Shown: piece after piece, positions 211 to 49,439 of the stretch
How the letters are laid out: each line of letters opens with the position of its first letter
Numbering within the stretch: the stretch's first letter is position 1
IMG/VR virus record: IMGVR_UViG_3300024308_000016
Coordinates: 1 to 64,000 of that record
DNA length: 64,000 nt
Reading direction: 5' to 3' (one strand)
Program-made: the position numbers and the translations under genes
Notes under the pieces: generated by a model
Database searches by the model: none
What the model saw: only the letters and a program-made list of their open reading frames with translations
What the model was told of the DNA's origin: nothing

Positions 211-248
211 TTTGTAAACAGTTTCAATCACGTATACTTTACTTGAGG
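211..248 (+). promoter_or_regulatory. Phage bipartite promoter motif, copy 1 (TTTGTA-N12-CACNTANACYYTACNTGAGG)
   Basis: tttgta at 211 and cacgtatactttacttgagg at 229; same motif and 18-nt offset at nine intergenic sites upstream of plus-strand cassettes. Confidence 0.8.
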
Positions 249-293
249 AGCATCCCGCTTTCTCAAAGATTTCCACTCAACTGAAAGACTCTA

Positions 294-710
294 ATGAAGC
301 ATCTCAACGACGCCTCCCAGCATTTCATCAACCATCTGGCTCTGGCCGGCCAAGCTATCCATGGCCTGAGGAAGGCTTACGAGGACTTCATGTACCTGCA
401 GCCCAATGGCTGGGAGTTGGTGAACCAGCGCGCGGTATCGTTTACCATCGAGACCACGTACAAGCCCCTGCAGGTAATGCCGCACTTGCACCATGTGGCT
501 ACAGACAAGGACTTCATCGGCAAAGCCAAGCCGTCCCTGCTGGTCTTTCACAGCGATGGCGTGATGGCGGTGGTCATCGCTGAGCCCAAGCCCCGAGATG
601 TGGTCGAATGCATCAGTGATTGCCCGATGCTCTACACTGTCTACTGCCACGACCGTAAGGACAACTCCAGAGTGTGCAACTTCATCAAGCGCATGGCTGC
701 CAACTCCTGA
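294..710 (+). CDS. Hypothetical protein (138 aa)
   Basis: ORF directly downstream of promoter motif; GAAAG-type RBS. Confidence 0.75.
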   Translation: MKHLNDASQHFINHLALAGQAIHGLRKAYEDFMYLQPNGWELVNQRAVSFTIETTYKPLQVMPHLHHVATDKDFIGKAKPSLLVFHSDGVMAVVIAEPKPRDVVECISDCPMLYTVYCHDRKDNSRVCNFIKRMAANS

Positions 711-724
711 AAGACTCTACTCCC

Positions 725-1393
725 ATGACCAAGATCGAACACCTGCGCTCCAAGTACAGCCATTTGCTGCACACCCGCGTCAAGCGAGTGCCTGTGAAGC
801 AGTACATCATCGTCGATGAAGCCCGCAAGCTCTACCATGTGGCGTACAGCGGTTTCACAGGCCGCCTGCGCCGCTCCATGGGCACGTCTGCTCTTCCCAT
901 CTCTGTGCGCGAGTACCTCATCAGCATCCACAGCACGCCTGGAGATCGAACCATCGCTGTGCTGCTGGTCGAGCCTATCGATCAAGAGGAGATCCGCCAG
1001 ATCTTCGAGGGCTACCGCACCTTCCGAGAAGCCATCCAGCCCCTGAACACCGGCTTGCGGGAGAGAAAGAGCACCATCTCCAAAGTGTGGCTAGCCACTC
1101 ACAAGCCCACAGGTGTCAAGCTGTATGTCTCAGCTGTGGAGAACTCCCGCAACTGGATGAGTGCTGACCGTATGCTGGACGCAGCCAGGTTCACCTTGCA
1201 GCACAGAGCTGACCGCATGAGCCTGGAAGACTGCAAACGTTTCTACGCGATCTTGAAGCCCTTCAAGCGCGAAGACTGGACCATCGAGACCGATGTGACT
1301 GTTCCCTCGTATGACGCCAAGCGCTATACACAGAACTTGAACATGGACCTGATGCCCCAGAACCTGGAAACCCTCCGTACTCTGTACCCTTAA
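725..1393 (+). CDS. Hypothetical protein, possible degenerate GIY-YIG-like domains; paralog of 1413-2102
   Basis: Start MTKIEHLR after gaaag RBS; YIIVDEARKLYHVAYSG and VWLATHKPTGVKLYVS segments. Confidence 0.6.
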   Translation: MTKIEHLRSKYSHLLHTRVKRVPVKQYIIVDEARKLYHVAYSGFTGRLRRSMGTSALPISVREYLISIHSTPGDRTIAVLLVEPIDQEEIRQIFEGYRTFREAIQPLNTGLRERKSTISKVWLATHKPTGVKLYVSAVENSRNWMSADRMLDAARFTLQHRADRMSLEDCKRFYAILKPFKREDWTIETDVTVPSYDAKRYTQNLNMDLMPQNLETLRTLYP

Positions 1394-1412
1394 ATAGAAA
1401 GCTTTCCCTGAT

Positions 1413-2102
1413 ATGACGAAGATCGAAGAGCTGCGTGCTCACTTTGAAGGTAATGTGATCGAACGCGGCAATAAGCTGGTCGGTAAGTGCTGGATCCTCC
1501 TGGATGAAGAAAACCGCATGTTCTACACCGGCAAGAGCGGCTTCAACAAGCAGCGCCGTTCCCTGTCATGGAACAACCTGCCCTCGGCAGTGACGGGCTA
1601 TCTGAACCGATGCGGCAAGTCCATCGTCGACAAGTCGCACTGCTTAATCTTGTCGGTGGAGGTATCTAGTGATCAGGTCGGTTCATTGCTGCCGGAATTC
1701 CAGCCTTTCAAGGAAGCTCGTCCTGTCAGGCGCGCTGGCTTTCGGGAATCGCAGGAAATGACAAGTTTCGTGTATTCGATCACGCACCCGGAAACAGGTC
1801 TGCAGATGTTCGCGTCTTTACTGACGACTGATCAAACTACCCAGCTCTACGGAGCTTCGCGCTCTACCGTGCTGGCGATGCAAATCTTGAAGAAACGCAT
1901 CAGTCATCTGTCACCAAACGAGCAAGAACTATTCAGGGCCGTCCCACTGTCCGGATCTATCAAGATCTGGGACTCCGAAGTCATCCGAGAAGTGGACGCT
2001 ACCGATAGCCGCGCATTGATCAAGCTTCTCAATGACTCTGCCATGACCAACAACATCCGTATCCTGAGGGAGATGCAAGCTAACCAGTCCACTACCCAGT
2101 AA
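1413..2102 (+). CDS. Hypothetical protein, paralog of 725-1393
   Basis: Start MTKIEELR; WILLDEENRMFYTGKSG and VYSITHPETGLQMFAS align with the upstream gene. Confidence 0.6.
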   Translation: MTKIEELRAHFEGNVIERGNKLVGKCWILLDEENRMFYTGKSGFNKQRRSLSWNNLPSAVTGYLNRCGKSIVDKSHCLILSVEVSSDQVGSLLPEFQPFKEARPVRRAGFRESQEMTSFVYSITHPETGLQMFASLLTTDQTTQLYGASRSTVLAMQILKKRISHLSPNEQELFRAVPLSGSIKIWDSEVIREVDATDSRALIKLLNDSAMTNNIRILREMQANQSTTQ

Positions 2103-2256
2103 CCTCACAACCCCCACTCCCATCAACCGCGTAACCTATTGGAGAATTGCGCACCAAAGCCTACACTCGACACCTAGGCCCATCGATCATTTCATGCTTT
2201 CCGTAATTCCGTGCCTAGGGCCAGTCAGTGTCAGGAAACGAAGGATCCCTTCTATC

Positions 2257-2817
2257 ATGACTTCCGCAGACCCTAAAGCTACTGGTATCGCTTACACCAT
2301 CGCTGGCGTGATCTTCGCCATCACGCTATGGATGCTGACGATGCCTGTGGCTCGCGCTCAGAGCTTGCAGGACCACATCGACGCCAACTGCCGCGTCAAC
2401 TGTGTGGCTGCCGACAAACTCGTAGATGTCGCAGCTCGCGCCGCCAAGCGCTTTGGCTTCGACTACAAGGCTCTCCTTGCCATCGTCCACGTAGAGTCCA
2501 AGTACAACACCCGTGCCAAGAACGGCTCCAGTGTTGGCCTGACTCAGGCACTATTGGTCTACCATAGACCGAAGTTCCTGGGCAAAGACTACTTTGCCGT
2601 GGAAGACAACATGTTCGTAGGCGCCGAAGTATTCGGTGCATGCTTTGCAAAACACAAAGGGAATTACCCGACCTCATTTTCCTGCTACAACGGCTATGGC
2701 AAAGGAGATAGCCGTTACCGAGACAAAGTGCTCAAGGCACTACGTGAAATCAGAGGACTGAAGTTGCCCACTCCGTCCCTGGATCCGCTCGGAGACTTCA
2801 TCGCTAGAGTGATCTAG
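2257..2817 (+). CDS. Lytic transglycosylase (SLT domain) with N-terminal membrane anchor or signal
   Basis: AIVHVESKYN (catalytic ES), GLTQ, and YNG motifs; hydrophobic N-terminus. Confidence 0.85.
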   Translation: MTSADPKATGIAYTIAGVIFAITLWMLTMPVARAQSLQDHIDANCRVNCVAADKLVDVAARAAKRFGFDYKALLAIVHVESKYNTRAKNGSSVGLTQALLVYHRPKFLGKDYFAVEDNMFVGAEVFGACFAKHKGNYPTSFSCYNGYGKGDSRYRDKVLKALREIRGLKLPTPSLDPLGDFIARVI

Positions 2818-2904
2818 CCAAAAAGAAAGCGTACCTCACCCCCACTCCAGCCGCGGTGGCCGGAGTGGGGAGATATGACGCATTTAAAGAGAAAGACTTC
2901 AATC

Positions 2905-3306
2905 ATGAAACTGACAAACGAGTTCGTAATAAGCACCCAGTTCTCGATGGGTCGCCGCACGTTCGCCTCCGCTCATCCGGAGCCTACCACGGATGACCGT
3001 GCTCGGCTGCTGGGCTACAAGGACGCGGCTGACCAGGCCAAAAAGATCGAACTCCTGAGGGCGGAGATCCGTCTGGACAACTACCAGGCTATGGTGCAAA
3101 TGGAAAACCATCTGCGCATCATACGTCTGGACCGCTGGAGTGACGAGGCATACGAGCACGTCAAGCAGCTGTACGACCGCGCTACACGGGAGATGAAGGA
3201 AGAACCCCATGTCGCCTTCTGGGGTCACTACCGTACCATCCGTGCCGTCCAAAAGGCCATCAACCGCCACGATCACACCATCGCTGACTTCAACACCCTT
3301 CACTGA
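2905..3306 (+). CDS. Hypothetical protein
   Basis: ORF with gaaag RBS after a hairpin. Confidence 0.65.
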   Translation: MKLTNEFVISTQFSMGRRTFASAHPEPTTDDRARLLGYKDAADQAKKIELLRAEIRLDNYQAMVQMENHLRIIRLDRWSDEAYEHVKQLYDRATREMKEEPHVAFWGHYRTIRAVQKAINRHDHTIADFNTLH

Positions 3307-3315
3307 AAGACTGTC

Positions 3316-4161
3316 ATGAACTTCATCTCTCGCTACCTCAGCTCCCTGAACACCCTGCGCAAAGAGCGCAAAGCCGCAGCTTTCAAGGCTGCCTTGGTTG
3401 ATGAGCTCGAACAGACCATCGACTCCATCTCCCCCGCTGCCATGAACATGCTGCAGCGATCGTACTACGTGCAGTGCGTTGAGGTGATCCAGGCGCGTGA
3501 CTTGGTCTCCGAGGTCCGGCGCTTCCTGGAAGACGGCTGGCCCAACATCGACTACACGGTCAGCGAGATCATCAAGCACCGCACTGACCTGACCGATCTG
3601 ATCGAGATGGCCTTTGCCGCCGAGAACTTCGCCCTGGTCAACCATATCCCCACCTTGCGCGCTGATGTGCTGGAGATGCTCAAGTACGCCAAGGAGCACA
3701 ACCTGTTTGCGTTTCAGCATTTCCAGTTGGTGCCCGCAGACTGGACAGGACTGGAGCAAGACTTCCCGGGCTACCGCAGCATCGAAGACATACAGCAGCG
3801 CGGCGGCACAGCCTGTATGGCCGGTCTGCTGAACCTGTGGCCTGCGTTTGACCATCTACCCATGATGCGTCCAGACGTGATGCCTACGCTCATGCACGAC
3901 AGTGTGGTCTTGAACGCCCAGGCATCGGTGGCTGCGATCCTCGGTGTGCCGTACTGGTTCGCCGGCGCTCTGTCCATGAGCTTCCAGGTTCCGGGAGATC
4001 TGGAAGATCGCCACGTCCTGTACAACAAGGCGTTCGAGGACATCACCGTGGACGACGTGATCGCTGTGATCGAAAAGCTCATTGACGGCATGAGCCCCGA
4101 AGACTTGATGGTCGAAGCCATCACCACACGCTCTATGCAAGCCGGTATCCATAGCGGTTGA
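3316..4161 (+). CDS. Hypothetical protein, paralog family A
   Basis: GGTACMAGLLNLWPAF ... LYNKAFEDITVDDVIAVI shared with genes at 6585, 8306 and 44792. Confidence 0.75.
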   Translation: MNFISRYLSSLNTLRKERKAAAFKAALVDELEQTIDSISPAAMNMLQRSYYVQCVEVIQARDLVSEVRRFLEDGWPNIDYTVSEIIKHRTDLTDLIEMAFAAENFALVNHIPTLRADVLEMLKYAKEHNLFAFQHFQLVPADWTGLEQDFPGYRSIEDIQQRGGTACMAGLLNLWPAFDHLPMMRPDVMPTLMHDSVVLNAQASVAAILGVPYWFAGALSMSFQVPGDLEDRHVLYNKAFEDITVDDVIAVIEKLIDGMSPEDLMVEAITTRSMQAGIHSG

Positions 4162-4174
4162 TCAGACTGCTCCA

Positions 4175-4217
4175 AGCCCTCGGCAGCCTTCGGGCTGTCA
4201 GGGTCTTTATTTTTTGC
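4175..4217 (+). terminator. Intrinsic terminator
   Basis: ggcagcc-ttcg-ggctgtc hairpin followed by T tract. Confidence 0.75.
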
Positions 4218-4256
4218 CCCAGTATGGGGATTAACTGGCACTTATAGGAGGAACTC

Positions 4257-4769
4257 ATGGCCACTTTATCCGCTATCATCGCAATGACTCGTGACTGCAT
4301 CATCGGTGTGGAAGGCAAGCTACCCTGGCCGCATCTCAAATGCGACATGGAGCACTTCAAGAAGACCACCATGAACGGTGTGGTGATCATGGGTCGCAAG
4401 ACCTGGGAGTCGCTGCCTGAGACCAGCCGACCGCTGAAGGATCGTGTCAACATCGTCATGTCCACGGATCCGGACTACGAAGCTCCTGGCGCCATCGTGA
4501 TGGCTACTCGCACCCAGGTCATGGACTACGTCAAGCGCTCAGCCCTGAAGTGCTGGGTGATCGGGGGCTACGAGATCTACGAGCTCTTTGCCAAGGAGTA
4601 CCAAGAAGTCCACATCACCCGCGTGGGCATGGTCGCCAAGCGCGGCACCTGCGCACCGCTGGTGCTCAGGGGTGTCAACTGGGTATCCAGCTCTGCGGCC
4701 AACCAGCACTTCTACGAGCAGGGCATGAACATCATGATCCAGCAGTACGTGCGCTCAGGCCAGGAATAA
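4257..4769 (+). CDS. folA: Dihydrofolate reductase
   Basis: IIGVEGKLPW, DMEHFKKTT, VIMGRKTWESLP, RPLKDRVNIV, WVIGG, ITRV motifs. Confidence 0.97.
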   Translation: MATLSAIIAMTRDCIIGVEGKLPWPHLKCDMEHFKKTTMNGVVIMGRKTWESLPETSRPLKDRVNIVMSTDPDYEAPGAIVMATRTQVMDYVKRSALKCWVIGGYEIYELFAKEYQEVHITRVGMVAKRGTCAPLVLRGVNWVSSSAANQHFYEQGMNIMIQQYVRSGQE

Positions 4770-4778
4770 CCCGGCCCC

Positions 4779-4816
4779 TTTGTGGAAAATTTCAGTCACA
4801 TATACTCTACCTGAGG
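4779..4816 (+). promoter_or_regulatory. Phage bipartite promoter motif, copy 2
   Basis: tttgtg at 4779, cacatatactctacctgagg at 4797. Confidence 0.8.
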
Positions 4817-4825
4817 ACAACAATA

Positions 4826-5401
4826 ATGTTTTCCTTAATCTCAAAAAGAAAGGTATTGTGTATGATGAATCTGAACTCCCAAAACTTCAATTACAAAGGC
4901 GTATTGGTGGAAGTGATCCAACCGATAGCCAAGCACACCATCCCCACGGTGTACAACCTTGTTTTGCGAGGCGGCGGCGCCGTCTCTGCTAAGCTGCAGT
5001 CCGAGATCACGGGAGACCGCACTGGACTGAAGTATCTGGACATCCAGATCGCCATCCTCCAAGAGCTCGTCGACACCCTGACCCAAGATGAACTCGTCGC
5101 GATCTTGGAGCACGAGATGGCCCACATCCTCAACGGAGACTTGGACCTGTCAGTCGACCAAGGCAAGAGCAGGATGATCCACCGGCTGGGCTACGAGCTC
5201 GCTGCTGACCAAGGCGCCGTGAAAGCTGTGGGTGCAGCGATCACCCTGGCGGCCCAAAAGAAGGCTGAGCGCTTCACGATGTCCAAGCTCCTGAAGACGA
5301 ACAACGACAAGCTGCTGAACTTCTTCACCTGGGCTTTCCGTACCCGGATTGCCCGCAAGCGTTTCAAAGCACTGGCTGATCAAGCCAAAGCCGCCCAGTA
5401 A
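4826..5401 (+). CDS. Zn metallopeptidase (M48/HtpX-like); start may be 4862
   Basis: ELVAILEHEMAH (HExxH) plus downstream ELAAD motif. Confidence 0.75.
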   Translation: MFSLISKRKVLCMMNLNSQNFNYKGVLVEVIQPIAKHTIPTVYNLVLRGGGAVSAKLQSEITGDRTGLKYLDIQIAILQELVDTLTQDELVAILEHEMAHILNGDLDLSVDQGKSRMIHRLGYELAADQGAVKAVGAAITLAAQKKAERFTMSKLLKTNNDKLLNFFTWAFRTRIARKRFKALADQAKAAQ

Positions 5402-5428
5402 TCCAACCCCTCAAATAGAAAGCTCACA

Positions 5429-5779
5429 ATGAACAAGTCCACCGTCACCCTGGTCTCCGATACCGTCCTGGCTACCAAGGAAGTCTTTGACAAGCTCAAA
5501 GAGATGTTGCCCAAGGACAAGTACCCGATCAACCGCTTGGCTGAAGCCTGCCGCATCATGGAGGACTTCGAGAACAAGCTGACGCCAGAAACCCGTGAAG
5601 GCGGGGTGACGGCCAAATACCGGGTCAGTACGCTGAATCGGGAGTTTGCCCTCCTGGGCAAACTCTTCCACGTCACGTATTCCTCGATCGACGACGGACA
5701 GAAGATCCAGGCCGTCATCACAATCAACCACTCGGCCTGCGAAGAACTGGCAGCGGTCATCAACACGCTGACTTGCTAA
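5429..5779 (+). CDS. Hypothetical protein
   Basis: ORF preceded by aaatagaaag. Confidence 0.7.
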   Translation: MNKSTVTLVSDTVLATKEVFDKLKEMLPKDKYPINRLAEACRIMEDFENKLTPETREGGVTAKYRVSTLNREFALLGKLFHVTYSSIDDGQKIQAVITINHSACEELAAVINTLTC

Positions 5780-5801
5780 TACCCCAAATAGAAAGCTTAA
5801 T

Positions 5802-5933
5802 ATGAACATCATCGCCCTGCTCGCATCCACTGACGCTTCCCCCATCCAGATCGGTGGCCTGGTCTTCGCCTTCGCCGCTTGCGCAGCTACCAAGCTGTAC
5901 ATCAAGCACCTGAAGAAGAAGCTGGATGCCTGA
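5802..5933 (+). CDS. Small membrane peptide (43 aa)
   Basis: MNIIALLASTDASPIQIGGLVFAFAACAATKLYIKHLKKKLDA after aaatagaaag; not in ORF track. Confidence 0.6.
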   Translation: MNIIALLASTDASPIQIGGLVFAFAACAATKLYIKHLKKKLDA

Positions 5934-6012
5934 TCTTCCCAGTTTCCCGGTTATAATCAATCCCGAGCCTGAATGATCGGGCTCATCAACCTCTCAAATA
6001 GAAAGCACTATC

Positions 6013-6504
6013 ATGGAACTCATCATCACTTCCAAGGAATTCACCGCCTCCCTGAACATGATCGCAGCAATCGCTCGCGTCATGCCCGAGGGAGTGGACC
6101 GCCGCACGTTTCTGGACGCACATGCCAACATCGGGCAAGTGCTGCGGGAATTCAACGACATCCCCTACGAAGCGCTGATCGTTAACCAGGATCTGATCAG
6201 CAGCTACGTCAACCGTCTGAATGACTACAGCGGTGAAGGTGGCCCCGTTGTGTCGTTCCAATTCATGCCCTCGGCATGCCGCACCCAGATCGAAGGCTCC
6301 TTTGCCATCGACTCGGACGTCATGGTTGAGGTGACGGAGGCCATCACCGAAGAGATCGATGGCCTGGCGGGAGCCTGCATCGCGCTGTACGGCATGGTGC
6401 GCATGTTCACCTCCAGCTTCAAGCGCCTGGGCAAGAAGGTCGAAGCTATCGTGCAAAACCACGTCCAGCTGTCGCGTGAAAGCGACGATCAGCGTCTGAT
6501 GTAA
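6013..6504 (+). CDS. Hypothetical protein
   Basis: ORF preceded by aaatagaaag, followed by terminator. Confidence 0.7.
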   Translation: MELIITSKEFTASLNMIAAIARVMPEGVDRRTFLDAHANIGQVLREFNDIPYEALIVNQDLISSYVNRLNDYSGEGGPVVSFQFMPSACRTQIEGSFAIDSDVMVEVTEAITEEIDGLAGACIALYGMVRMFTSSFKRLGKKVEAIVQNHVQLSRESDDQRLM

Positions 6505-6520
6505 GTCAGCGTCCTACAGT

Positions 6521-6565
6521 GAGCCCGGATCTTCGGATCCTGGGCTCGTCCTTTTCTTTTTTGTC
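6521..6565 (+). terminator. Intrinsic terminator
   Basis: gagcccggatc-ttcg-gatcctgggctc hairpin plus T tract ending ttttttgtc. Confidence 0.75.
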
Positions 6566-6584
6566 CAATAGAAAGTCCCTGATC

Positions 6585-7421
6585 ATGAACATCCTGCAAC
6601 GCTTTCGCGCCAACCTGTACCGCGCAGTGAACTCCCTGCGCACCACCAGCCAAGACAGCGCCAAGATGGCCAAGGACCGGCTGCTGGATGCACGCAACCA
6701 GCCCGCTGCCCCGACGGTGATCTTCGAGGATGTCGATACCCTGACTCCGGAGATGGCGCAAAAGCTGTGTGCTACGTCCGAAGCCATGAAGGACATCCCC
6801 AATGTCGAGGCTGTGTATGCGTCCTCCCCGCCAGCTGTTACAGATGACGTCCCCTCCATTTTGGTGCGACCATCCGAGCGCCTTGATACGCTGGCTTCCT
6901 TCCTGCAAGAAAACAAGGAGGGCATCGAGCAGGTGATCGAGCTGCTGAAGCTCGCTCACGAAAACAACCTGTACCATGCGCGCTGGTATGTTTGTCATGC
7001 CGAGGATGCCAACTGGGATCTGAACATGAATGCCCGCAATCCCGGTCGTATGCCCGACACCATCGAGGAGATGATGGAACGCAAGATGTGTGGGGATCTG
7101 GGCTTTTTGATGAGCGTGTGGCCCTACTTCCGTCAGCGGGGCTTTCAGCACACCATCATCGGCATGGCTGTCTACTACGACAAAGTGGCCGATGCGCTGT
7201 ACAACACGCCAGCTACGGCCATTGCCAAGATCCTGAACCTGGATGTGAAGCTGGTAGAGTTGATCATCAACGGCTCACCAGTGCTGCACAAAACGCCGCA
7301 CCAGCTGTACCTCAAGACCTGGCGCGAGGTCACGGTTCTGGATCTGATCCAGGTCTTTGAAAACATCCTGGAGCAGGGTCAATACTCTGTTCTCATCGGC
7401 GCTCACGTCTCCTTCAAGTAA
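6585..7421 (+). CDS. Hypothetical protein, paralog family A
   Basis: CGDLGFLMSVWPYF ... LYLKTWREVTVLDLIQVF. Confidence 0.7.
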   Translation: MNILQRFRANLYRAVNSLRTTSQDSAKMAKDRLLDARNQPAAPTVIFEDVDTLTPEMAQKLCATSEAMKDIPNVEAVYASSPPAVTDDVPSILVRPSERLDTLASFLQENKEGIEQVIELLKLAHENNLYHARWYVCHAEDANWDLNMNARNPGRMPDTIEEMMERKMCGDLGFLMSVWPYFRQRGFQHTIIGMAVYYDKVADALYNTPATAIAKILNLDVKLVELIINGSPVLHKTPHQLYLKTWREVTVLDLIQVFENILEQGQYSVLIGAHVSFK

Positions 7422-7438
7422 AGAAAGGTATCTCAGTC

Positions 7439-8257: not shown

Positions 8258-8305
8258 TCCACTCCAAGGGGCCAAGTGCCCCTGCTGTTAAATAGAAAGA
8301 TCCCA

Positions 8306-8914: not shown

Positions 8915-8945
8915 TCCCAACTATTAAATAGAAAGACCAATCATC

Positions 8946-9590: not shown

Positions 9591-9609
9591 ATAGAAAGGT
9601 CAACTTCTC

Positions 9610-10242: not shown

Positions 10243-10253
10243 AGGAAACTTCC

Positions 10254-10889: not shown

Positions 10890-10901
10890 TCACACTTTTC
10901 A

Positions 10902-10948
10902 TCCCAGAGCCTTCGGGCTCTGGGAGTCAGACCCTTTCTTTTTTTGTC
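10902..10948 (+). terminator. Intrinsic terminator
   Basis: tcccagagcc-ttcg-ggctctggga plus tttttttgtc. Confidence 0.8.
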
Positions 10949-11030
10949 TCAAAGTAGGAAAGCGACTGCCCCAGTCATCATCTGAGGCATACTCGCCTTT
11001 ACTTCTATTAGAGGACCTTTCGCTTTCCTT

Positions 11031-11513: not shown

Positions 11514-11515
11514 TC

Positions 11516-12511: not shown

Positions 12512-12533
12512 GAGCATAACGCTCAAACAGCAC

Positions 12534-12580
12534 TCACCAGAGCCCTTAACGGGGCTCTGGTGGGGCTTGTATGCTTTTTT
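12534..12580 (+). terminator. Terminator after phuZ
   Basis: caccagagccc ... gggctctggtg hairpin plus T tract. Confidence 0.7.
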
Positions 12581-12603
12581 GGACACTTACACCTTACTTG
12601 AGG
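12566..12603 (+). promoter_or_regulatory. Phage bipartite promoter motif, copy 3
   Basis: cttgta at 12566, cacttacaccttacttgagg at 12584. Confidence 0.75.
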
Positions 12604-12666
12604 TAAAAACCGTTTAAAAGTTAGAAAACAGCGGTATTGAATGTGAACACTTAAAGGGGATAGCGC

Positions 12667-13089: not shown

Positions 13090-13091
13090 GA

Positions 13092-15011: not shown

Positions 15012-15020
15012 GAGTATAGA

Positions 15021-15945: not shown

Positions 15946-15955
15946 GCGCATCATC

Positions 15956-18650: not shown

Positions 18651-18688
18651 TTTGTACGGATTTTTGACCACTTATACCTTACTTGAGG
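18651..18688 (+). promoter_or_regulatory. Phage bipartite promoter motif, copy 4
   Basis: tttgta at 18651, cacttataccttacttgagg at 18669. Confidence 0.8.
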
Positions 18689-18731
18689 ATTAGCGTCCTT
18701 ATCGATCAACAAGAACTGGGAGAGAACGTTT

Positions 18732-24701: not shown

Positions 24702-24739
24702 TTTGTAGATTATTTCGATCACATATACTCTACTTGAGG
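24702..24739 (+). promoter_or_regulatory. Phage bipartite promoter motif, copy 5
   Basis: tttgta at 24702, cacatatactctacttgagg at 24720. Confidence 0.8.
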
Positions 24740-24800
24740 ATTGGATCTATTCTTAGTCCCAAAGCTCGTCTTCTTATCTAACTCCGCTAAAGGAATTGCC

Positions 24801-33828: not shown

Positions 33829-33989
33829 GTCGGTTTAAGGGGGAGATTGAGGGAAAGCCATACTATCGAAGGATGAGCCTTTCCCTCGTACAAAAGCAGT
33901 GCAGATGTTTTTGTATATAAGGTGGTGAAACACCAACGCAGCCTTCGGGCTGCATAGGGACCATGTTTCGCTAGTGCGAGAAAGCCCCC

Positions 33990-34027
33990 TTTGTAAACTA
34001 ATGTGGCCACTTAAACTCTACTTGAGG
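33990..34027 (+). promoter_or_regulatory. Phage bipartite promoter motif, copy 6 (upstream of chimallin)
   Basis: tttgta at 33990, cacttaaactctacttgagg at 34008. Confidence 0.8.
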
Positions 34028-34114
34028 ATAGAGTCACATCTTTTCTCGCTCACAACAATAGCTTAGTATTCTAGGCACAGTCAGAAACCCTCTTCTCGTA
34101 AAACGGAAACACCT

Positions 34115-36073
34115 ATGTCTGAAAAGTTCAACTTCAACGCCCGCGCTGGCCAAGCTCAAGCCGAGGAAGTGGAAGACGTGCAACCGCGTCAACCCTCCGC
34201 AGCTTCGGGTGGCCGTGCCGAAGAAGTGCGTCGCGTCTCCAGCCCCTTCAAGACCCTGGCTCAAGGCTCTCGCCTGGTGGGTCAGCGCATCGCCGAAAAC
34301 GCCGGCTCCGACAAGTTCAATGCCCTGCTCAAGAACGTGCAGGAAGTGTTCAAGGAAGCCGATGCGGCCAAGGACGAATTCGTGATCCTGCCCATGCCCA
34401 AGGAAGTGACCCGCATGCACTTCTCGGCCATCGTGCTGGCGCGTCGTCCCGAAGTGCCCGTGGTCGAAGGCTGGTCGGTCAACCACCTGGTCGTGGCCCA
34501 GGTCCTGATGGTGGAAGCCACCGGCGACAACCCGCGCCCCTACAACGACGACTCGGTGCGCAACCGCAACTTCCAGATCACGCCCACGTCCGAAGACGTG
34601 TACAACGAGATCTTCCAGAACGCCGCTCGCAAGGTTGTCACCGATGCCCTGCGCACCCAAGTGGCCGTCAACCTGATGGACTGCGTGATCGTGCGCCGCG
34701 ACTTCGATGTCACCAACATCAACGACGTGCGCCGCCTGATCTCGGCCGCCACCACCGGCATCACCACCCGCGCCATGCAGCGTCACCCGGACTTCACCGA
34801 CTGGAACCTGTCGGGCTGGACCGACGGCATCCGCGACATCCAGCTGCCCGTGAGCATCGAGTCGACCACGACCGAAGTGCAAACGACTGCCAACGGCGAT
34901 GTCGTGCATGCGGACATGGTCATCACCGTGGGCGTGGAAAGCCGTCAGCGTGATCGCACTCCGCGTTTCAACGACGACATCAGCTCCGAGCCCGTGTGCG
35001 AAACCTCGGTGAACATCGAGCTGGTTCCCGTGAACCCGGACTTCCTGGACGATGCCGACATCAACCGCGGCCGTCGCCGTCGCCGTGACCAGGACTTCGT
35101 TCCCCAAGCGGCCTGGATGCCTCGCGCCAACATCGTGAATATCGAACAAATGCAGGCCCGCACCCTGGCCGGCATCCTGTTCTCCATCGCTTCGGTGTCC
35201 GAGCTCAACCGTGACCGCCAGTGGGCGTCGCTGTTCCGTCCCCGTCGTGGTGCCGGCCGCAAGGACGTGAACTTCTACGACATCGGCGCGCTGAACATCC
35301 ACGCAAACGTGGCCGACGAAAAGGGCGACTTCGGTCAGCCCATCGACACCACGATCCCCGAGTTCGGGGACGAAGAGTTCAGCATCTTCCTGGACCGCAC
35401 GCTGACGCAGCAGATGGCCATCGGCATCGACTGCCCGGACACCGGCCTGCAGGCGTTCTACACGGCATCGTTCGCGGCCATCGCCACCGGCGACAACAAG
35501 GTGCGCCAGCGCGCGACCATGGACGTGTTCGACGCAGCCATGGATCTGACCAACGGCGCCGTCGAGATGTTCTTCGATCCCACCAAGGATCAGATCATCG
35601 AAGGCCCCGGCGAGCGCTTCCACATGGGCTACTGGACCGACGCCAACGGCCAACGCCGTGACATCCGTCAGCTGGCATCGTTCCTGCCCGTGGCCAACAT
35701 GGTCGCATCCAACGGCTCCAACATGCGTCTGCTCGACGACTGGCTGGACACCTGGTTCGGCAGCCAGGACGAGAACTACCGCCTGGCCGAGCGCCTGAAG
35801 CTGCTCAACGCCATCTGCGACGATTCGCTCGTTGTCACTGGCATGGGCATCCGTCCTACCGTGACCGGCCACTTCGCCGACGCACTGGCCAAGGGCATCC
35901 GCGAAACCAACGTGCCTCTGGTGCCTCGTAACGGCGACCACAACACGGTGCTCCAACAGCGCCGCGTGGTGGCCGGCTACGGCACAGGCGCGCTGCTGCG
36001 CACCACCGGCGTGAGCCGCTCGCTGGAGCGCCGCGGTGGTGACGGCCGTCGCTACCGCCGCAGCTACAACTGA
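34115..36073 (+). CDS. chmA: Chimallin, phage nuclear shell protein
   Basis: 652 aa; directly upstream of nvRNAP beta' and downstream of DNA polymerase and gp52/53-like genes; strongly biased codons; DIGALNI and GYWTDANGQRRDIR segments; own promoter and terminator. Confidence 0.85.
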   Translation: MSEKFNFNARAGQAQAEEVEDVQPRQPSAASGGRAEEVRRVSSPFKTLAQGSRLVGQRIAENAGSDKFNALLKNVQEVFKEADAAKDEFVILPMPKEVTRMHFSAIVLARRPEVPVVEGWSVNHLVVAQVLMVEATGDNPRPYNDDSVRNRNFQITPTSEDVYNEIFQNAARKVVTDALRTQVAVNLMDCVIVRRDFDVTNINDVRRLISAATTGITTRAMQRHPDFTDWNLSGWTDGIRDIQLPVSIESTTTEVQTTANGDVVHADMVITVGVESRQRDRTPRFNDDISSEPVCETSVNIELVPVNPDFLDDADINRGRRRRRDQDFVPQAAWMPRANIVNIEQMQARTLAGILFSIASVSELNRDRQWASLFRPRRGAGRKDVNFYDIGALNIHANVADEKGDFGQPIDTTIPEFGDEEFSIFLDRTLTQQMAIGIDCPDTGLQAFYTASFAAIATGDNKVRQRATMDVFDAAMDLTNGAVEMFFDPTKDQIIEGPGERFHMGYWTDANGQRRDIRQLASFLPVANMVASNGSNMRLLDDWLDTWFGSQDENYRLAERLKLLNAICDDSLVVTGMGIRPTVTGHFADALAKGIRETNVPLVPRNGDHNTVLQQRRVVAGYGTGALLRTTGVSRSLERRGGDGRRYRRSYN

Positions 36074-36530: not shown

Positions 36531-36566
36531 TTTGTAGGTGGCATCGATCACTTACACCTTACTTGG
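36531..36566 (+). promoter_or_regulatory. Phage bipartite promoter motif, copy 7 (upstream of nvRNAP subunit)
   Basis: tttgta at 36531, cacttacaccttacttgg at 36549. Confidence 0.75.
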
Positions 36567-36616
36567 ACATGAGGAGAGATCCTCAAATATGTCCGCCATT
36601 ATTGAAAGGAGCCAAC

Positions 36617-39600
36617 TTGCCAATTGTTCTGGAAGTAGAAGACCACGATCGGATGTTTGCGCAAACTATCGAGCGCGTGGAGCCTATCTTTCTCAACGAC
36701 CTTGCCAACAGCACGGAAGAAGACAAAGAACGCATCCGCGCGCTGACGATGAACCAGCTCAATTCCGACACCATCTCGATCATTCCCAGATGCGGCTGCG
36801 GCCACACCAAAGGACGATTCGCCCTGGGCAAGCAATGCCCCGTGTGCCAAGATGTGGTCAAGAGCAACATCGACGAGTCAGTCACCAGCTTGCTGTGGTT
36901 CCGTAAACCGGAATTCGTGCACAAGCTCGTGAACCCGGCTGTGTGGTCGATGCTCAGCTCCTACTTCTCCAAAAGCAATTTCAACGCGATACAATACCTC
37001 ACCGACAACTTGTATACGGCGGGCACTCGTACACCTCCGGAGATCGAAAAGCTCTCCGAGTACGGCTTCGAGCGTGACTTGAACTTCTTCACCCGCAACT
37101 TCGACGACGTCTTAGGCGGGCTGATGAGCGCGTTCAAGCAAAAGGCCAACAAGCCTTATCGAGAGCTCATCGATTTCCTGGACGACAACAGGAGCCGTAT
37201 CTTCAGTGACCAACAACCCGTGCTCAACCGCGCGATGTTCGTTGCTGACAAGACCAACTTGGGCATCTACATGGAGAACTCCGTCAAAGATGCCCTTGAC
37301 GCGTACTACCACGTCGTCTCCATCGACAAAGACTTCCATGACAGAAGCGAGAAGGTGATCGTCAATCGCACTGCACGCATGCAGGCGCGTATGGCGGCGT
37401 TCTTCGACAGCTACACTGGCACCAACATGCAGCCCAAACCCGGGCATGCACGGCGCCACGTCTATGGATCTCGTGTCATCTTCTCTGCGCGAGGCGTGAT
37501 CAGCTCCACCACTGACCACCATCGCCATGATGAGATCGGAGTACCCTGGTGTATTGCGGTGCCGATGTTCCAGCACCACCTCGTCGGCATGCTCATGCGT
37601 CACGGCTTCACCTACAACGGTGCGCTGGGCTATGTGTATAGGCATGTGCACATCTACGATGAGCTGCTGCATCGCTTCTTGGACCAAATCTTCAGGGAGT
37701 ACCCGGGTGGCCGAGGACCATCGATGCTCCTCCATCGAAACGATTAGTAAACTATGAAATAGCATTCCTAATTAAGTGGACCAACTTAGTGAGGAAGCTA
37801 TGCCAATTCCAGCATTTACAAAAGAGTACAAACATCTCGGGAAGATTTACCGAGCTGTTCCCGGTTATCGACGACTGATAGTCTCTGAAGACGGAGAGTT
37901 TTATCGTCTTGGTGAAGACGGGAATCCTGCAAAGAGATGCCCGCAGTTCAAGATGCACAACACCCGCACTGAGCGAAGATCAGACACTACGTACTATTGG
38001 ACAGTACGAGAGATCGCGGATAATGGTGGCGTCAAAACCACCGGTGCTCACATCTTGGTGTGCAGAGCGTGGAATGGAATGCCCCCGGATGACGGGATCA
38101 AGTACGACGTTAACCACAAAAATAGCATCAAGACGGATAACAGGGCTGAAAACCTTGAATGGTCGACACGCTCGCAGAACATTGCTCACTGTTTCGATAG
38201 TGGGGAGAACTGCGCTGCCGTCCGGATCATCCAGCGAAACATAGAGACGGGGGAAGAGAAAATCTTCCGAAGTATCAAGAACTTCGCTGAGACCATGGGA
38301 CTATTTCGCGTGAATGTTCGCAGTTTCATCGCTGCGCATTCTAAGGAGCCTCATAACGGCTTCATCTACTCCATTGAGGAGCCGCGAAACTTCCGCATAA
38401 AGCCTGTACGTTATCAGACGAAAGAAGTGGCCTACTTCGATTATACGTCGCGAAAGCTCACAATCTGCTCCAGTATAGAGCATGCTAGTCTAGAGACAGG
38501 CATAAAGAGTGCGACCATCAAGCACGCGTGTAACCGCTTTGCTAACGATGGTGTCGCTGAGCCGACGCGTCAGTTCTTCTTCCAGTTTTTCAAACCTGGG
38601 ATGGAGTGGCCAGAATTCACTGCTGAGGAATTGGAGAAGTTCGAAAAGCGGTTCTTGAATTTTTCAAGAGCTGCAAGCGGACCTCGAAAACATAGTTCAG
38701 AATCATTTCCCTCTACAGAAATGTAGTTGTATCCCGGAACACCGGGAGTAAGTTCTTGAATTGCGGGAACATCTCGTAAGGTCCCCACTACCAAGCCAGT
38801 GTAGTAATGCGCTGGTGGCCTGGGTAACTACCAGGGTACGGTAACAAGGTGGGGAATAGAGACAATCCGCAGCGAAGCATCCGGAAACGGATGAACGTTC
38901 GACGGTCATCGAAAGGGGAAGGAAGTCGGGTAAGACTCCTGAGACCGAGTAGAGTAGGGCCCAAGTGGGTGCAGTAGCAAACTGCCGTAAGCCGAAGCGG
39001 GAACAGTCTGACCACTGAAAGGTGAAGACTAAGATATGACCTGTGCCACGCAGCTGAGTGATCGGCTGGTTTCCGAGAGGCGTGGAGGGTGTCGATGCAC
39101 ACCTGGACTTGCTAACGACAAGTTTGGACAAACAGCCCACTTTAATGCAGGGGTCGATGCAGCGAGTCTTCGGGAAACTGAAGACGGACCCTAGAGATAA
39201 GACTATCTCCATGTCGATCTTGATCGTCGTAGCTCCCAACGCTAAATTGGCCTATACGTCAGAAATGGCGTAGTGAATCTTACTGAATTGCTGGAACCCC
39301 CTAAGAGCCCCACTACCACTGCGAGCGGTAACGCAAAGCGACGGTTTGACAAGTGTGAGGATTGGACAACCAGCAGCGAAGCCTCCTTACGGGTGGAGGA
39401 ACGTTCAACGACTATGGCTGAGATGCCAGTACACTCAAGTGAGTGGAAGTAGTAAGCACCTTACCGGATAGAGCCGAAGGTGAAGATATAGTCTGACCTT
39501 TAGGGAAAGCCTAAAGACGCGCGTAATGGCGCTAGATAGTACTAACGACACTATCTGAACGCCCGTCGATTTCGATGGTCGATGGCCATCATTAAACTCT

Positions 39601-44745: not shown

Positions 44746-44783
44746 TTTGTAGAATGATGCGGTCACTTACACCTTACATGAGG
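44746..44783 (+). promoter_or_regulatory. Phage bipartite promoter motif, copy 8
   Basis: tttgta at 44746, cacttacaccttacatgagg at 44764. Confidence 0.8.
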
Positions 44784-44791
44784 ACAAACAG

Positions 44792-45400
44792 ATGAATCTT
44801 CAAAACTTAAACACCCTGATCACGATCATGGAGCGCGCTCGTGGCAAAAACAGCGTCTACATGCCGCTGCACCAAGCCACCAACCACTATCGCCTGATCG
44901 TGCGAGAGGAGATCCCCAAGTCGGAGGCAGAGTTCTATGCCCGCAAGTTCAAGGCTGACTTGCTGGGACATGTGGCCTTGTCTCCAGAATGGGCAGCCGC
45001 TGGCGGTGGTATGGATCTCATGGGCATGCCCGAGATGCCTGGCACTGAAGAGGGTCGGCAAGTCGTCTACCCAGCCGTGCAGGCGATGGAGAACTGGCTC
45101 AAGCTCACCAATCCAACAGTGGCGGCTATCTTCTATGGCTTTGAGATCGACTTTGGCGACGAATGCAAGTGGATCGACAAAAAGACCTACACCTACTCCC
45201 AAAAGGAGTGGAACAAGATCACCGCTGAAGATATCCTGCGGGTCTTGTATGAGTTGAGAGACAACGGAGAGATCGCGTTCTTGGAACGTATCGCTCGGGA
45301 GCTTCCTAACTACCCGACACAACAAAAGACGCTACTCGATGTATGTGTGCGTCGGTTTGTGGCTATGGTGCATGCGCTCAAGCGAATGCCCAACGTCTAA
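44792..45400 (+). CDS. Hypothetical protein, paralog family A
   Basis: ADLLGHVALSPEW ... KEWNKITAEDILRVL; N-terminus resembles gene at 8306. Confidence 0.7.
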   Translation: MNLQNLNTLITIMERARGKNSVYMPLHQATNHYRLIVREEIPKSEAEFYARKFKADLLGHVALSPEWAAAGGGMDLMGMPEMPGTEEGRQVVYPAVQAMENWLKLTNPTVAAIFYGFEIDFGDECKWIDKKTYTYSQKEWNKITAEDILRVLYELRDNGEIAFLERIARELPNYPTQQKTLLDVCVRRFVAMVHALKRMPNV

Positions 45401-48400: not shown

Positions 48401-48567
48401 CGGATACGTACTTCAAGTGGCTGGCGGCTTACCAGGAACACTATGTCAACGCATTCTCCAACAGCATCAAGTTCGATGCATTGGTGGCGTTGTTCTTCGA
48501 GGCATTTAGGCTCAGTCAGACGTTCTTCAAGCTCAGCAACGCTCGTGTGGCGCTGAGGCTGGGATAA
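45470..48567 (+). other. Array of nine translationally coupled small helical CDSs (45470-45796, 45793-46116, 46113-46469, 46456-46803, 46800-47153, 47150-47497, 47494-47862, 47859-48251, 48238-48567)
   Basis: All 107-130 aa with overlapping stop/start codons; bounded by hairpins at about 45405-45440 and 48578-48628. Confidence 0.8.
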
Positions 48568-48669
48568 AGCGTCCTCTATCCACCAGCCCCCGATGGGCTG
48601 GTGGATGAGTGCTCTTTTCTTTTTTGTCTGCGATGTTCGGATCATCATCTGGTAAAACACGGAGGATCT

Positions 48670-49017
48670 ATGGACATCAACATCGTAAGTGGTCTGCTGG
48701 TGAGCCACTTCAAAGCTCTGTACGAGCAGTACCCTGGAGAGCAATTCAACTGCATCGTCACCGCCAAGCAGTCGTGCAGGAAACGCAACTACCCGTACCT
48801 TGTCACGGGCTATGCGGTATCGTCGAATGTGGCCAAGCGTATCTTGTACCTGACCAGCGAGATCAGTAAGGTGGCGCCCGGTCCTGTGGAAGCAGACACT
48901 CGCATCTACGTGAGGACATCCAAGAACGTACCGATCTCCTACTTCTGGGTGAGAGACAACAACACGCTGGAGCCTATCGAGCTGCCCCTGACTCCTGAAG
49001 ACCCAAGACCTACGTAG
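48670..49017 (+). CDS. Hypothetical protein
   Basis: ggagg RBS. Confidence 0.7.
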   Translation: MDINIVSGLLVSHFKALYEQYPGEQFNCIVTAKQSCRKRNYPYLVTGYAVSSNVAKRILYLTSEISKVAPGPVEADTRIYVRTSKNVPISYFWVRDNNTLEPIELPLTPEDPRPT

Positions 49018-49077
49018 AAAATAGCTGGCCTCTGTATACAGTGATCCGACTTGGATTGCTTATGGAGGTTTCGGGAA

Positions 49078-49350
49078 ATGGGAGATAACATCGGTAACTT
49101 GGTGCTGGGCTGGTACGGCATCGTCATGTGCGTCGTGTTGATCATGGCGTGCATCGGCTTCATCGCCTCGTTCAGCGACAACCTGGCGCTGTGGACCAGC
49201 ATCCCGCTGGGCGCGGCAGCTGGCGTGTTCGTGACATGGGCGGCGCACTGGTTCATGATGGTGGTGGTGGGATTCGTCGCCGCCATGGGGCCCAAGTTGT
49301 TCGACTTCATTCAGCGGGACTTCCAAAAGACGATCGGCTGGTTCAGCTGA
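49078..49350 (+). CDS. Small membrane protein
   Basis: ggagg RBS; hydrophobic. Confidence 0.65.
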   Translation: MGDNIGNLVLGWYGIVMCVVLIMACIGFIASFSDNLALWTSIPLGAAAGVFVTWAAHWFMMVVVGFVAAMGPKLFDFIQRDFQKTIGWFS

Positions 49351-49401
49351 CGCATTCACACCTTCGCTTTCCTTCGGGAAAGCGAAGGTGGATATATGCC
49401 G

Positions 49402-49439
49402 TGTGTAGAAAATCTGAATCACTTATACTCTACTTGAGG
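49402..49439 (+). promoter_or_regulatory. Phage bipartite promoter motif, copy 9
   Basis: tgtgta at 49402, cacttatactctacttgagg at 49420. Confidence 0.8.

What the first reader, a model, noticed from the sequence alone, without database searches (positions are those of the whole stretch)
211..49439. Nine-copy bipartite promoter with invariant spacing
Seen: TTTGTA-like boxes at 211, 4779, 12566, 18651, 24702, 33990, 36531, 44746 and 49402. Each is exactly 18 nt before CAC(T/A/G)TA(T/C/A)AC(T/C)(C/T)TAC(T/C/A)TG, followed by AGG in eight copies. All are intergenic, on the plus strand, often just after a terminator, and they include the chimallin and nvRNAP genes. Inference: this is the early promoter read by the virion RNAP, and its roughly 38-bp span is long for this phage group. 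It defines the early regulon.
Basis: partly seen in the sequence, partly recalled or inferred. Interest (0 to 1): 0.6.

Follow-up and report, generated by a model that had tools for sequence, protein, structure and literature searches.

The report
Early promoter set of a jumbo phage
The nine repeats are real. They belong to a 24-copy set of phage promoters that most likely start the first wave of transcription in a nucleus-forming jumbo phage; this kind of element is already known, but here each copy also encodes a small hairpin at the start of its RNA.

Summary
All nine copies lie at the stated coordinates on the + strand, against 0.01 expected by chance. The whole 272-kb phage genome holds 24 copies, none on the minus strand, and 12 positions are identical in every copy.

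The genome is a divergent chimallivirus with full homologue sets of the phiKZ virion and non-virion RNA polymerases. A copy sits at most one gene upstream of chimallin and of every non-virion polymerase locus. None precedes a virion-polymerase or structural gene. phiKZ's own early promoters occupy the orthologous places.

The same motif in the same register occurs in several related metagenomic phages with GC from 41 to 58%. Sites shared with a closer relative keep both boxes while the spacer and flanks drift.

So it is most likely the early promoter read by the injected virion polymerase. No transcript data exist.

Its ~38-bp span is not unusual, because phiKZ and 201phi2-1 early promoters are conserved at -10, -20 and -30. 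The window's nine are only part of the regulon.

New here: the conserved 3' end of the motif pairs with a site-specific complement downstream. This gives a covarying stem-loop at the RNA start and places the start at the invariant G, 34 nt after the first T.

The parts
211..249 (+). Promoter copy 1. Predicted start is G at 245. First gene is 294-710, function unknown.
   Evidence: Start-site stem-loop at 243-266, -8.1 kcal/mol.
4779..4817 (+). Promoter copy 2, with upstream box TTTGTG. Predicted start is G at 4813. Its unit includes the PhuZ-like tubulin gene (tblastn match 11552-12196).
   Evidence: Upstream hairpin at 4758-4776 and start-site stem-loop at 4812-4837.
12566..12604 (+). Promoter copy 3, with upstream box CTTGTA. 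Predicted start is G at 12600.
   Evidence: Strong upstream hairpin at 12533-12564 ends 1 nt before the box. This copy has no stem-loop at the start; the first hairpin begins at 12609.
18651..18689 (+). Promoter copy 4. Predicted start is G at 18685.
   Evidence: Upstream terminator-like hairpin at 18596-18630 followed by a run of T. Start-site stem-loop at 18684-18701.
24702..24740 (+). Promoter copy 5. Predicted start is G at 24736.
   Evidence: The orthologous copy in relative R3 (L043:424) keeps both boxes while four spacer positions change. Upstream hairpin at 24677-24699 and start-site stem-loop at 24736-24767.
33990..34028 (+). Promoter copy 6, the chimallin promoter. Predicted start is G at 34024, giving a 91-nt leader.
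   Evidence: The orthologous copy in R3 (L043:9874) and the whole leader are conserved. Upstream hairpin at 33957-33987 and start-site stem-loop at 34023-34048.
34115..36073 (+). Chimallin (nuclear shell protein) gene, the first gene of unit 6.
   Evidence: phrog_4795, E = 1.4e-44. Pfam PF25677 is recorded for this protein.
36531..36569 (+). Promoter copy 7, before the gp55-like non-virion RNA polymerase gene. Predicted start is G at 36565. AGG is replaced by GGAC.
   Evidence: The deviant 5' arm GGACAT is matched by ATGTCC downstream, giving a stem-loop at 36564-36595 of -14.9 kcal/mol. The R3 orthologue at L043:12403 has a different but equally paired start.
36589..37741 (+). First exon of the phiKZ gp55-like non-virion RNA polymerase subunit gene.
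   Evidence: tblastn with phiKZ gp55, E = 3e-50. phrog_2987. The exon end is set by strain contigs and by tblastn.
44746..44784 (+). Promoter copy 8. Predicted start is G at 44780. Here GAGGA also sits at ribosome-binding distance, 7 nt before the ATG at 44792.
   Evidence: R3 has no copy at the orthologous place, which shows promoter turnover. The start-site stem-loop at 44779-44802 is weak, -3.6 kcal/mol.
49402..49440 (+). Promoter copy 9, with upstream box TGTGTA. Predicted start is G at 49436.
   Evidence: Strong upstream hairpin at 49352-49399 ends 2 nt before the box. Start-site stem-loop at 49434-49451. It shares its leader with six copies outside the window.

Best explanation
The motif is the early-class promoter of a divergent nucleus-forming jumbo phage (Chimalliviridae-like). 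It is most likely read by the multisubunit virion RNA polymerase that enters the cell with the DNA.

The genome holds 24 co-oriented copies, each at the head of a unit of non-structural genes. Most copies follow directly after the terminator hairpin of the preceding unit, so the early genome is cut into insulated terminator-promoter modules.

Taking the invariant G (position 35 counted from the first T of TTTGTA) as +1, the promoter has three parts:
- a -30 box, TTTGTA, at -34 to -29;
- a T-rich -20 region;
- a -10 region, CAC-n-TA-n-AC at -16 to -8, followed by TAC at -5 to -3 and T at -1.

This is the same -10/-20/-30 layout reported for phiKZ and 201phi2-1 early promoters, but with a different consensus that is not AT-rich.

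The first transcribed bases, G-A-G-G-A/C, pair with a complement that differs from copy to copy and lies a few bases downstream. Each early RNA would therefore begin with a short 5' stem-loop. This most likely protects it from decay that depends on a free 5' end, or masks the ribosome-binding-like GAGGA.

Shown here: the motif, its copy number, placement, conservation in relatives, and covariation of the stem-loop. Inferred: which polymerase reads it, the timing, the exact start site, and what the stem-loop does.
For: Statistics
- Nine matches in the window against 0.01 expected.
- 24 copies in the genome, all on the + strand, at 28-41 bits against at most 12.1 in random genomes.
- 12 positions identical in all 24 copies.

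Polymerases
- tblastn with phiKZ proteins finds homologues of the virion set (gp178, gp149, gp180, gp80) and of the non-virion set (gp55, gp68, gp71/73, gp74, gp123).

Placement
- Copies lie at most one gene upstream of chimallin (33990) and of every non-virion polymerase locus (36531, 118594, 124445, 190761).
- A polymerase cannot be needed to make its own first copy.
- No copy precedes a virion-polymerase, terminase, sheath or head gene.
- phiKZ's own early promoters lie before gp54, gp68, gp70.1/71 and gp121-123, which are the orthologous places.

Conservation
- Relative G001 shares 44% median protein identity, 31% for chimallin and 54-65% for the large virion polymerase subunits compared. 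It has about 20 copies in the same register: matrix similarity 17.2 against a null maximum of 7.5.
- Relative R3 (chimallin 77% identical) keeps three orthologous copies. Both boxes are unchanged while the spacer and flanks change.
- Further metagenomic contigs with GC 41-58% carry the motif.

Terminator link
- In 18 of 24 copies the 60 nt upstream fold at -18 kcal/mol or better, against 22.5% of random windows (p = 7e-6).

Start-site stem-loop
- Folding from G35 gives a mean of -7.4 kcal/mol against -4.4 +/- 0.4 in shuffles.
- Each arm pairs better with its own downstream partner than with swapped partners: -5.75 against -3.72 +/- 0.36 in G000 and -5.17 against -2.52 +/- 0.37 in G001. No permutation out of 500 reached the native value in either genome. 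Deviant arms are compensated.
- The sense strand folds better than the antisense strand (p = 6e-4 and 1e-3), and about 15% of pairs are G-U.

Literature
- Each RNA-polymerase-encoding jumbo phage has a conserved motif before its early operons (PMC7598289).
- phiKZ virion polymerase starts from 28 early promoters, including those of the non-virion polymerase genes (PMC13282480).
- Conservation at -10, -20 and -30 is described in PMC11512511.
Against: There is no transcript evidence. The only RNA-labelled runs that hold this phage are kept as assembled contigs at low depth. Their contigs run across two copies, so they show neither a start nor timing.

The phage is known only from metagenomes. 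Host, virion proteome and rifampicin behaviour are unknown.

Sequence similarity to the phiKZ early consensus is weak, z about 2-3, and the best alignment offset is ambiguous between +2, +4 and +6. Homology of the promoters themselves is therefore not shown.

The core is not AT-rich, unlike the published description of this class.

Under the +2 alignment the start would fall after GAGG. The stem-loop would then not be in the RNA.

Four of the 24 copies lack a stem-loop at the start.
Confidence: 0.75

Rival explanations
1. The copies are strong early promoters for the host sigma-70 RNA polymerase, as in T4. TTTGTA would act as the -35 element and TAYACY as the -10 element.
For: With G35 as +1, the geometry resembles a bacterial promoter: a box at -34 to -29, and T at -12 with A at -11 in every copy. 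Eight copies read TATACT at -12 to -7.
Against: The sigma-70 scan of window 1-20000 flags none of the four copies there.

TTTGTA matches TTGACA at only 3 of 6 positions. The better TTG alignment leaves a 15-bp spacer.

The base at -7 is C in 10 of 24 copies.

The invariant CAC at -16 to -14, C at -8, TAC at -5 to -3 and TG at -1/+1 are not sigma-70 features.

The phage encodes a complete virion polymerase set. Relatives of this family transcribe without the host enzyme (PMC13282480, PMC7598289).

The motif is kept across phages with GC 41-58%, whose hosts are probably different.
Confidence: 0.07
2. The motif is read by the non-virion RNA polymerase, as a middle-class promoter, or by both phage polymerases.
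For: In 201phi2-1 some non-virion polymerase genes have middle or late promoters nearby, and self-amplification was proposed (PMC11512511). Nothing here measures timing.
Against: Every non-virion polymerase locus, including the sigma-like gp68 homologue, has a copy as its nearest promoter-like element. Another enzyme must therefore read these copies first.

Known non-virion promoters are short motifs at the start site: TATG in phiKZ and AACA-N6-TA in AR9 (PMC7598289). They are not roughly 40-nt conserved elements.

The placement matches that of phiKZ early promoters.
Confidence: 0.1
3. The repeat is not primarily a promoter. It could be a recombination cassette like the T4 promoter-terminator motifs (PeSLs), an RNA processing site, or the binding site of a regulator.
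For: The hairpin-plus-motif arrangement resembles the composite terminator/promoter motifs that mediate gene shuffling in T4-like phages (PMC4122927). One copy (44746) is absent from the closer relative R3. Seven copies share a leader in front of unrelated genes.
Against: PeSLs are themselves promoters, so this reading adds a role and does not replace the promoter one.

The motif itself has no conserved internal pairing. Only its 3' end pairs, and with downstream sequence.

Strict co-orientation with genes, a fixed place after terminators and before the first gene of a unit, and placement matching phiKZ promoters all fit a promoter best.
Confidence: 0.05

Closest known systems
Early (virion RNA polymerase) promoters of phiKZ and 201phi2-1
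   Same: - A highly conserved motif of about 40 nt that is over-represented in the genome.
- Co-oriented with units of non-structural, mostly orphan genes.
- Placed before chimallin and the non-virion polymerase genes.
- Conserved blocks near -30, -20 and -10.
- TG at the start.
- Often directly after a terminator.

Sources; PMC8244752, PMC11512511, PMC13282480.
   Different: - The consensus differs and is not AT-rich: CAC-n-TA-n-AC-nn-TAC-n-TG here against TATATTAC in phiKZ.
- Matrix similarity is only z about 2-3.
- The upstream box lies about 4 nt closer to the start.
- phiKZ early promoters show no significant start-site stem-loop.
- Here every non-virion polymerase locus has its own copy, unlike 201phi2-1.
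AR9 early promoters (AAATATATATTAT-N6-G+1)
   Same: A single conserved block with a purine start a fixed distance downstream. They are read by an injected multisubunit polymerase, and 33 of 34 bioinformatic predictions were confirmed by dRNA-seq (PMC5312081).
   Different: AR9 is not nucleus-forming, has uracil in its DNA, and has an AT-only consensus. No -30 box or start-site hairpin has been described for it.
PeSLs, the composite promoter-terminator motifs of T4-like phages
   Same: Short conserved cassettes that join a stem-loop and an early promoter. They are repeated between small orphan genes in variable regions (PMC4122927, PMC2839356).
   Different: PeSL promoters are sigma-70 promoters for the host enzyme. 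Their proposed main role is recombination. Here only one gain or loss between relatives was seen.
5'-terminal stem-loops that stabilise bacterial mRNAs, such as the ompA leader (from general knowledge, not tested here)
   Same: A hairpin that starts within 0-2 nt of the RNA 5' end, as predicted for 20 of 24 copies.
   Different: Here the 5' arm is part of the conserved promoter and is the same in nearly all units. The function has not been tested.

Membership tests
phiKZ-type early promoter read by the virion RNA polymerase | The phage encodes the split beta/beta' virion polymerase (homologues of phiKZ gp178, gp149, gp180, gp80). | tested here: met
   tblastn finds all four, with E-values from 1e-33 to 1e-114.
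phiKZ-type early promoter read by the virion RNA polymerase | An over-represented, highly conserved motif that is co-oriented with and upstream of non-structural operons. | tested here: met
   24 copies, all on the + strand and all intergenic. No structural gene lies directly behind one.
phiKZ-type early promoter read by the virion RNA polymerase | The motif precedes the non-virion polymerase genes and chimallin. | tested here: met
   Copies at 33990, 36531, 118594, 124445 and 190761. The phiKZ counterparts lie before gp54, gp68, gp71 and gp121-123.
phiKZ-type early promoter read by the virion RNA polymerase | An AT-rich core of about 10 nt centred near -10 (TATATTAC-like). | tested here: inconclusive
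   The core keeps TA at -12/-11 but is not AT-rich. Similarity to the phiKZ matrix is z about 2-3 and the offset is ambiguous.
phiKZ-type early promoter read by the virion RNA polymerase | Conserved blocks at -10, -20 and -30 relative to the start. | tested here: met
   With G35 as +1 the blocks fall at -34 to -29, -23 to -21 and -16 to -8. This depends on the predicted start site.
phiKZ-type early promoter read by the virion RNA polymerase | Primary transcripts start there within minutes of infection, without new protein synthesis and despite rifampicin. | not testable with these tools
   Only assembled contigs of metagenomic runs are available. They show no starts.
Sigma-70 promoter | TTGACA and TATAAT-like hexamers 16-18 bp apart, with A at position 2 and T at position 6 of the second hexamer. 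| tested here: not met
   None of the four copies in window 1-20000 is flagged. The base at -7 is C in 10 of 24 copies.
T7-type promoter read by a single-subunit RNA polymerase | The phage encodes a T7-like single-subunit RNA polymerase. | tested here: not met
   The genome gives no match to Pfam PF00940 or to the T7 polymerase protein at E up to 1. Both searches lacked a positive control, so this is weak negative evidence.
PeSL-type promoter-terminator cassette | A conserved stem-loop joined to an early promoter, repeated between variable orphan genes. | tested here: met
   18 of 24 copies follow a strong hairpin. The first genes are mostly orphans. A role in recombination was not tested.

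The most novel reading that the evidence does not exclude
The element is a composite cassette, promoter plus 5' stem-loop. Every early RNA made by the injected polymerase would begin with the same G-A-G-G stem. This common 5' structure would then act as a mark for early phage messages. It could shield them from host 5'-end-dependent RNases or RNA-targeting defences. It could also serve for sorting or export from the early infection vesicle, or for selective translation. The clade has kept this cassette across phages with GC from 41 to 58%.
Probability: 0.25. Interest if true: 0.65.

Novelty: new variant of a known kind. Interest (0 to 1): 0.4.

Why it matters
It provides a clean, sharply bounded list of 24 predicted early promoters for an uncultured, deeply divergent nucleus-forming phage. 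That list gives a first map of the phage's early transcription units.

The same promoter is kept in relatives whose chimallin is only about 31% identical but whose large virion polymerase subunits are 54-65% identical. This clade and phiKZ therefore form a natural pair for asking which part of the virion polymerase reads which promoter block. No structure or specificity factor for that enzyme appeared in the papers searched here.

The covarying stem-loop at the RNA start was not significant in the phiKZ promoters tested here. It is not mentioned in the phiKZ, 201phi2-1 or AR9 transcriptome papers consulted. It can be tested directly with reporters.

Tried and rejected
- Reads: the genome comes from a subsurface metagenome. 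The RNA-labelled runs hold it only as short contigs at low depth, and these cross the copies at 33990 and 36531. No start, strand or timing could be read, so the result counts neither for nor against.
- IMG/VR searches: searches with the chimallin protein, a three-protein alignment and DNA patterns found only one relative, G001. Three other single hits in low-GC contigs were chance matches.
- PHROG scans: the first gene behind each copy mostly gave no family. This fits early orphan genes but assigns no function.
- Paralogy: the first genes are not paralogous, so the shared leaders do not come from gene duplication.
- Literature: searches for core strings returned only unrelated primers. A search on phiKZ early-transcript hairpins found no description of a start-site stem-loop.
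- phiKZ comparison: the matrix comparison gives weak similarity with an ambiguous offset, so I do not claim sequence homology of the promoters.
- AGG as ribosome-binding site: rejected as a general reading, because start codons mostly lie 46-91 nt downstream and have their own GAAAG or AGGA signals. It may hold at 44746 and possibly at 4779.
- DNA-level cruciform, as in the N4 promoter hairpin: unlikely, because the sense strand folds better than the antisense strand and about 15% of pairs are G-U.
- Procedure note: ten short strings copied from the output were typed into that script.
Full report
**What is there**

The nine sites exist exactly as described. The core pattern, with up to one mismatch allowed, gives nine matches in the window, all on the + strand, against 0.01 expected from shuffles.

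The window is the first 64 kb of a single-contig virus record of 272,393 bp with 56% GC. A weight matrix built from the nine sites finds 24 copies in that genome, all on the + strand. Core scores are 28-41 bits. Twenty random genomes never exceed 12.1 bits, and no intermediate hits occur.

Twelve positions are identical in all 24 copies: C19 A20 C21, T23 A24, A26 C27, T30 A31 C32 and T34 G35, counted from the first T of the upstream box. Each base of the TTTGTA box is kept in 19-22 of the 24 copies, and its distance to the core never varies. Seventeen of the 24 copies lie in the first 125 kb.

**What the genome is**

- The ORF at 34115-36073 is a chimallin (phrog_4795, E = 1e-44). Its best match among deposited phages is only 25% identical.
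- tblastn with phiKZ proteins finds homologues of all four virion polymerase pieces (gp178, gp149, gp180, gp80). It also finds all non-virion polymerase pieces (gp55, gp68, gp71/73, gp74, gp123).
- Local gene order matches phiKZ: DNA polymerase, chimallin, gp55-like gene, HNH endonuclease.
- No T7-like polymerase was found. Both searches lacked a positive control.

**Placement**

- Every copy lies between genes and points the same way as the gene that follows.
- A copy lies at most one gene upstream of chimallin (33990) and of each non-virion polymerase locus: 36531, 118594, 124445 and 190761.
- The virion polymerase genes and the structural genes tested have no copy directly upstream. These were homologues of terminase, sheath, gp27, gp87, gp129 and gp182. 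They are either on the minus strand or separated from the nearest copy by minus-strand genes.
- The first genes behind the copies are mostly small orphans.
- In 240 kb of phiKZ I recovered 16 of its early promoters. They sit before gp54, gp68, gp70.1/71 and gp121-123, which are the orthologous places.

The non-virion polymerase cannot be needed for its own first synthesis. The enzyme that reads these copies must therefore be present at the start of infection. The literature says that in this family this enzyme is the injected virion polymerase (PMC13282480, PMC7598289).

**Relatives**

- G001 is a 167.7-kb IMG/VR contig with 46.7% GC. Its chimallin is 31-32% identical, its median protein identity is 44%, and the large virion polymerase subunits compared are 54-65% identical. 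It carries about 20 copies of the same motif in the same register, all on one strand. They include copies before its chimallin, gp55-like and gp68-like genes. Matrix similarity is 17.2 against a null maximum of 7.5.
- R3 is a closer relative (chimallin 77% identical) known from metagenome contigs syntenic with window 24-46 kb. It has copies at the places orthologous to 24702, 33990 and 36531. In the pairwise alignments both boxes are unchanged or change only within the allowed classes, while spacer positions and flanks diverge. The copy at 44746 has no counterpart in R3.
- A metagenome scan found the motif in further contigs with GC from 41 to 58%, among them one of 242.8 kb.

**Is it unusually long?**

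No. The 16 phiKZ promoters aligned here are conserved over about 41 nt. Published work describes phiKZ and 201phi2-1 early promoters as conserved at -10, -20 and -30 (PMC11512511), and as an extended -10 box plus a T-rich part upstream of -19 (PMC8244752).

**Terminator link**

In 18 of 24 copies the 60 nt upstream fold at -18 kcal/mol or better, against 22.5% of random windows (Mann-Whitney p = 7e-6). Many hairpins end 0-3 nt before the box. The box is also present where there is no hairpin (211, 36531, 118594), so it belongs to the promoter and not to the terminator tail.

**The AGG and the start site**

Start codons mostly lie 46-91 nt after position 35 and have their own GAAAG or AGGA signals. 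Positions 33-41 pair instead with a complement 3-14 nt downstream.

- Folded from G35, 20 of 24 copies form a hairpin that starts within 2 nt of that G. Mean energy is -7.4 kcal/mol against -4.4 +/- 0.4 in shuffles.
- Pairing of each arm with its own downstream part beats pairing with swapped parts. In G000 the values are -5.75 against -3.72 +/- 0.36, and in G001 -5.17 against -2.52 +/- 0.37. No permutation out of 500 reached the native value in either genome.
- Copies with deviant arms carry matching partners: 36531, 124445 and 84980 in G000, and several in G001.
- The sense strand folds better than the antisense strand (p = 6e-4 and 1e-3), and about 15% of pairs are G-U. This points to RNA and not DNA.
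- Nine of ten further copies from other lineages also have a hairpin beginning within the first 3 nt.
- phiKZ early promoters show no significant effect of this kind.

If the hairpin is in the RNA, transcription must start at or just before position 35. That fits three other observations:
- T34 G35 is invariant, and phiKZ likewise has TG at its start (PMC7598289).
- With that start the conserved blocks fall at -30, -20 and -10.
- At 44746 the motif's GAGGA is the only ribosome-binding-like sequence before the ATG.

The alternative alignment to phiKZ (offset +2) would put the start after GAGG. I consider this less likely but cannot exclude it.

**Rivals**

- Host sigma-70 promoter: unlikely. 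None of the four copies in window 1-20000 passes a sigma-70 scan. The base at -7 is C in 10 of 24 copies. The invariant positions are not sigma-70 positions.
- PeSL-like recombination role (PMC4122927): may exist in addition but does not replace the promoter reading.

**What is missing**

No transcript data exist. The runs that hold this phage are kept only as contigs. The identity of the polymerase, the timing and the exact start are inferences.

**Verdict**

The main interpretation is supported by placement and comparative evidence. Two side claims are not supported. The element is a new variant of a known kind: the early promoter of RNA-polymerase-encoding jumbo phages, with its own consensus and a built-in start-site stem-loop.

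Noticed in passing
window 37742-39820: The gp55-like non-virion polymerase gene is interrupted. The first exon ends near 37741 and the second lies near 39112-39264. Between them sits a ~1.37-kb insertion carrying an HNH endonuclease ORF (37776-38726). Contigs of two other samples and relative R3 lack the insertion. Rfam group I intron matches lie at 39211-39516 and 39547-39820, and R3 has an HNH ORF at about that place.
   Followed up: partly
whole genome, e.g. window 1394, 5415, 5998, 8292, 43544, 51141, 58172: A second conserved motif, (CTCT)AATAGAAAG, lies 13-19 nt before the start codons of about 41 genes, all on the + strand and mostly within 1-122 kb. It looks like an extended ribosome-binding signal but could be a second promoter class. 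phiKZ leaders carry a similar AAATAGG before their start codons.
   Followed up: partly
window 49436-49481; genome 69855, 84980, 96602, 112163, 266091 (and partly 211): Seven early units share a ~45-nt leader: GAGGCA, four variable bases, GCTTCA, ATATCTTT, and finally AATAGAAAG. The first genes behind them are unrelated by blastp.
   Followed up: partly
window 34024-34114: The 91-nt chimallin leader is about 94% identical between the window and relative R3, although the protein is only 77% identical and the sequence upstream of the promoter does not align. It folds into three hairpins, z = -2.1.
   Followed up: partly
genome 180589 (L033:16589): One copy has no clear + strand gene behind it. 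It points at the 3' end of a convergent DnaB-like helicase gene (181320-182849, minus strand). It may drive an antisense or non-coding RNA, or the weakly coding 168-aa ORF at 180650-181156.
   Followed up: partly
window 44746 compared with L043:20930-21060: The promoter copy at 44746 is missing from the closer relative R3, although the upstream terminator is conserved. This shows gain or loss of copies between strains.
   Followed up: yes
all 24 copies: The core occurs in two linked sequence types: CAC-A-TA-T-AC-TC-TAC and CAC-T-TA-C-AC-YT-TAC. Positions 22, 25, 28 and 29 vary together. Relative G001 uses mostly the first type.
   Followed up: no
window 22148-22221, minus strand: The genome's only predicted tRNA gene, tRNA-Thr (anticodon TGT), lies on the minus strand inside a + strand gene block.
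   Followed up: no
genome 242275-242579: The gp178-like virion polymerase gene is in two pieces about 300 nt apart, whereas in G001 the pieces are almost contiguous. An intron or other insertion is possible.
   Followed up: no
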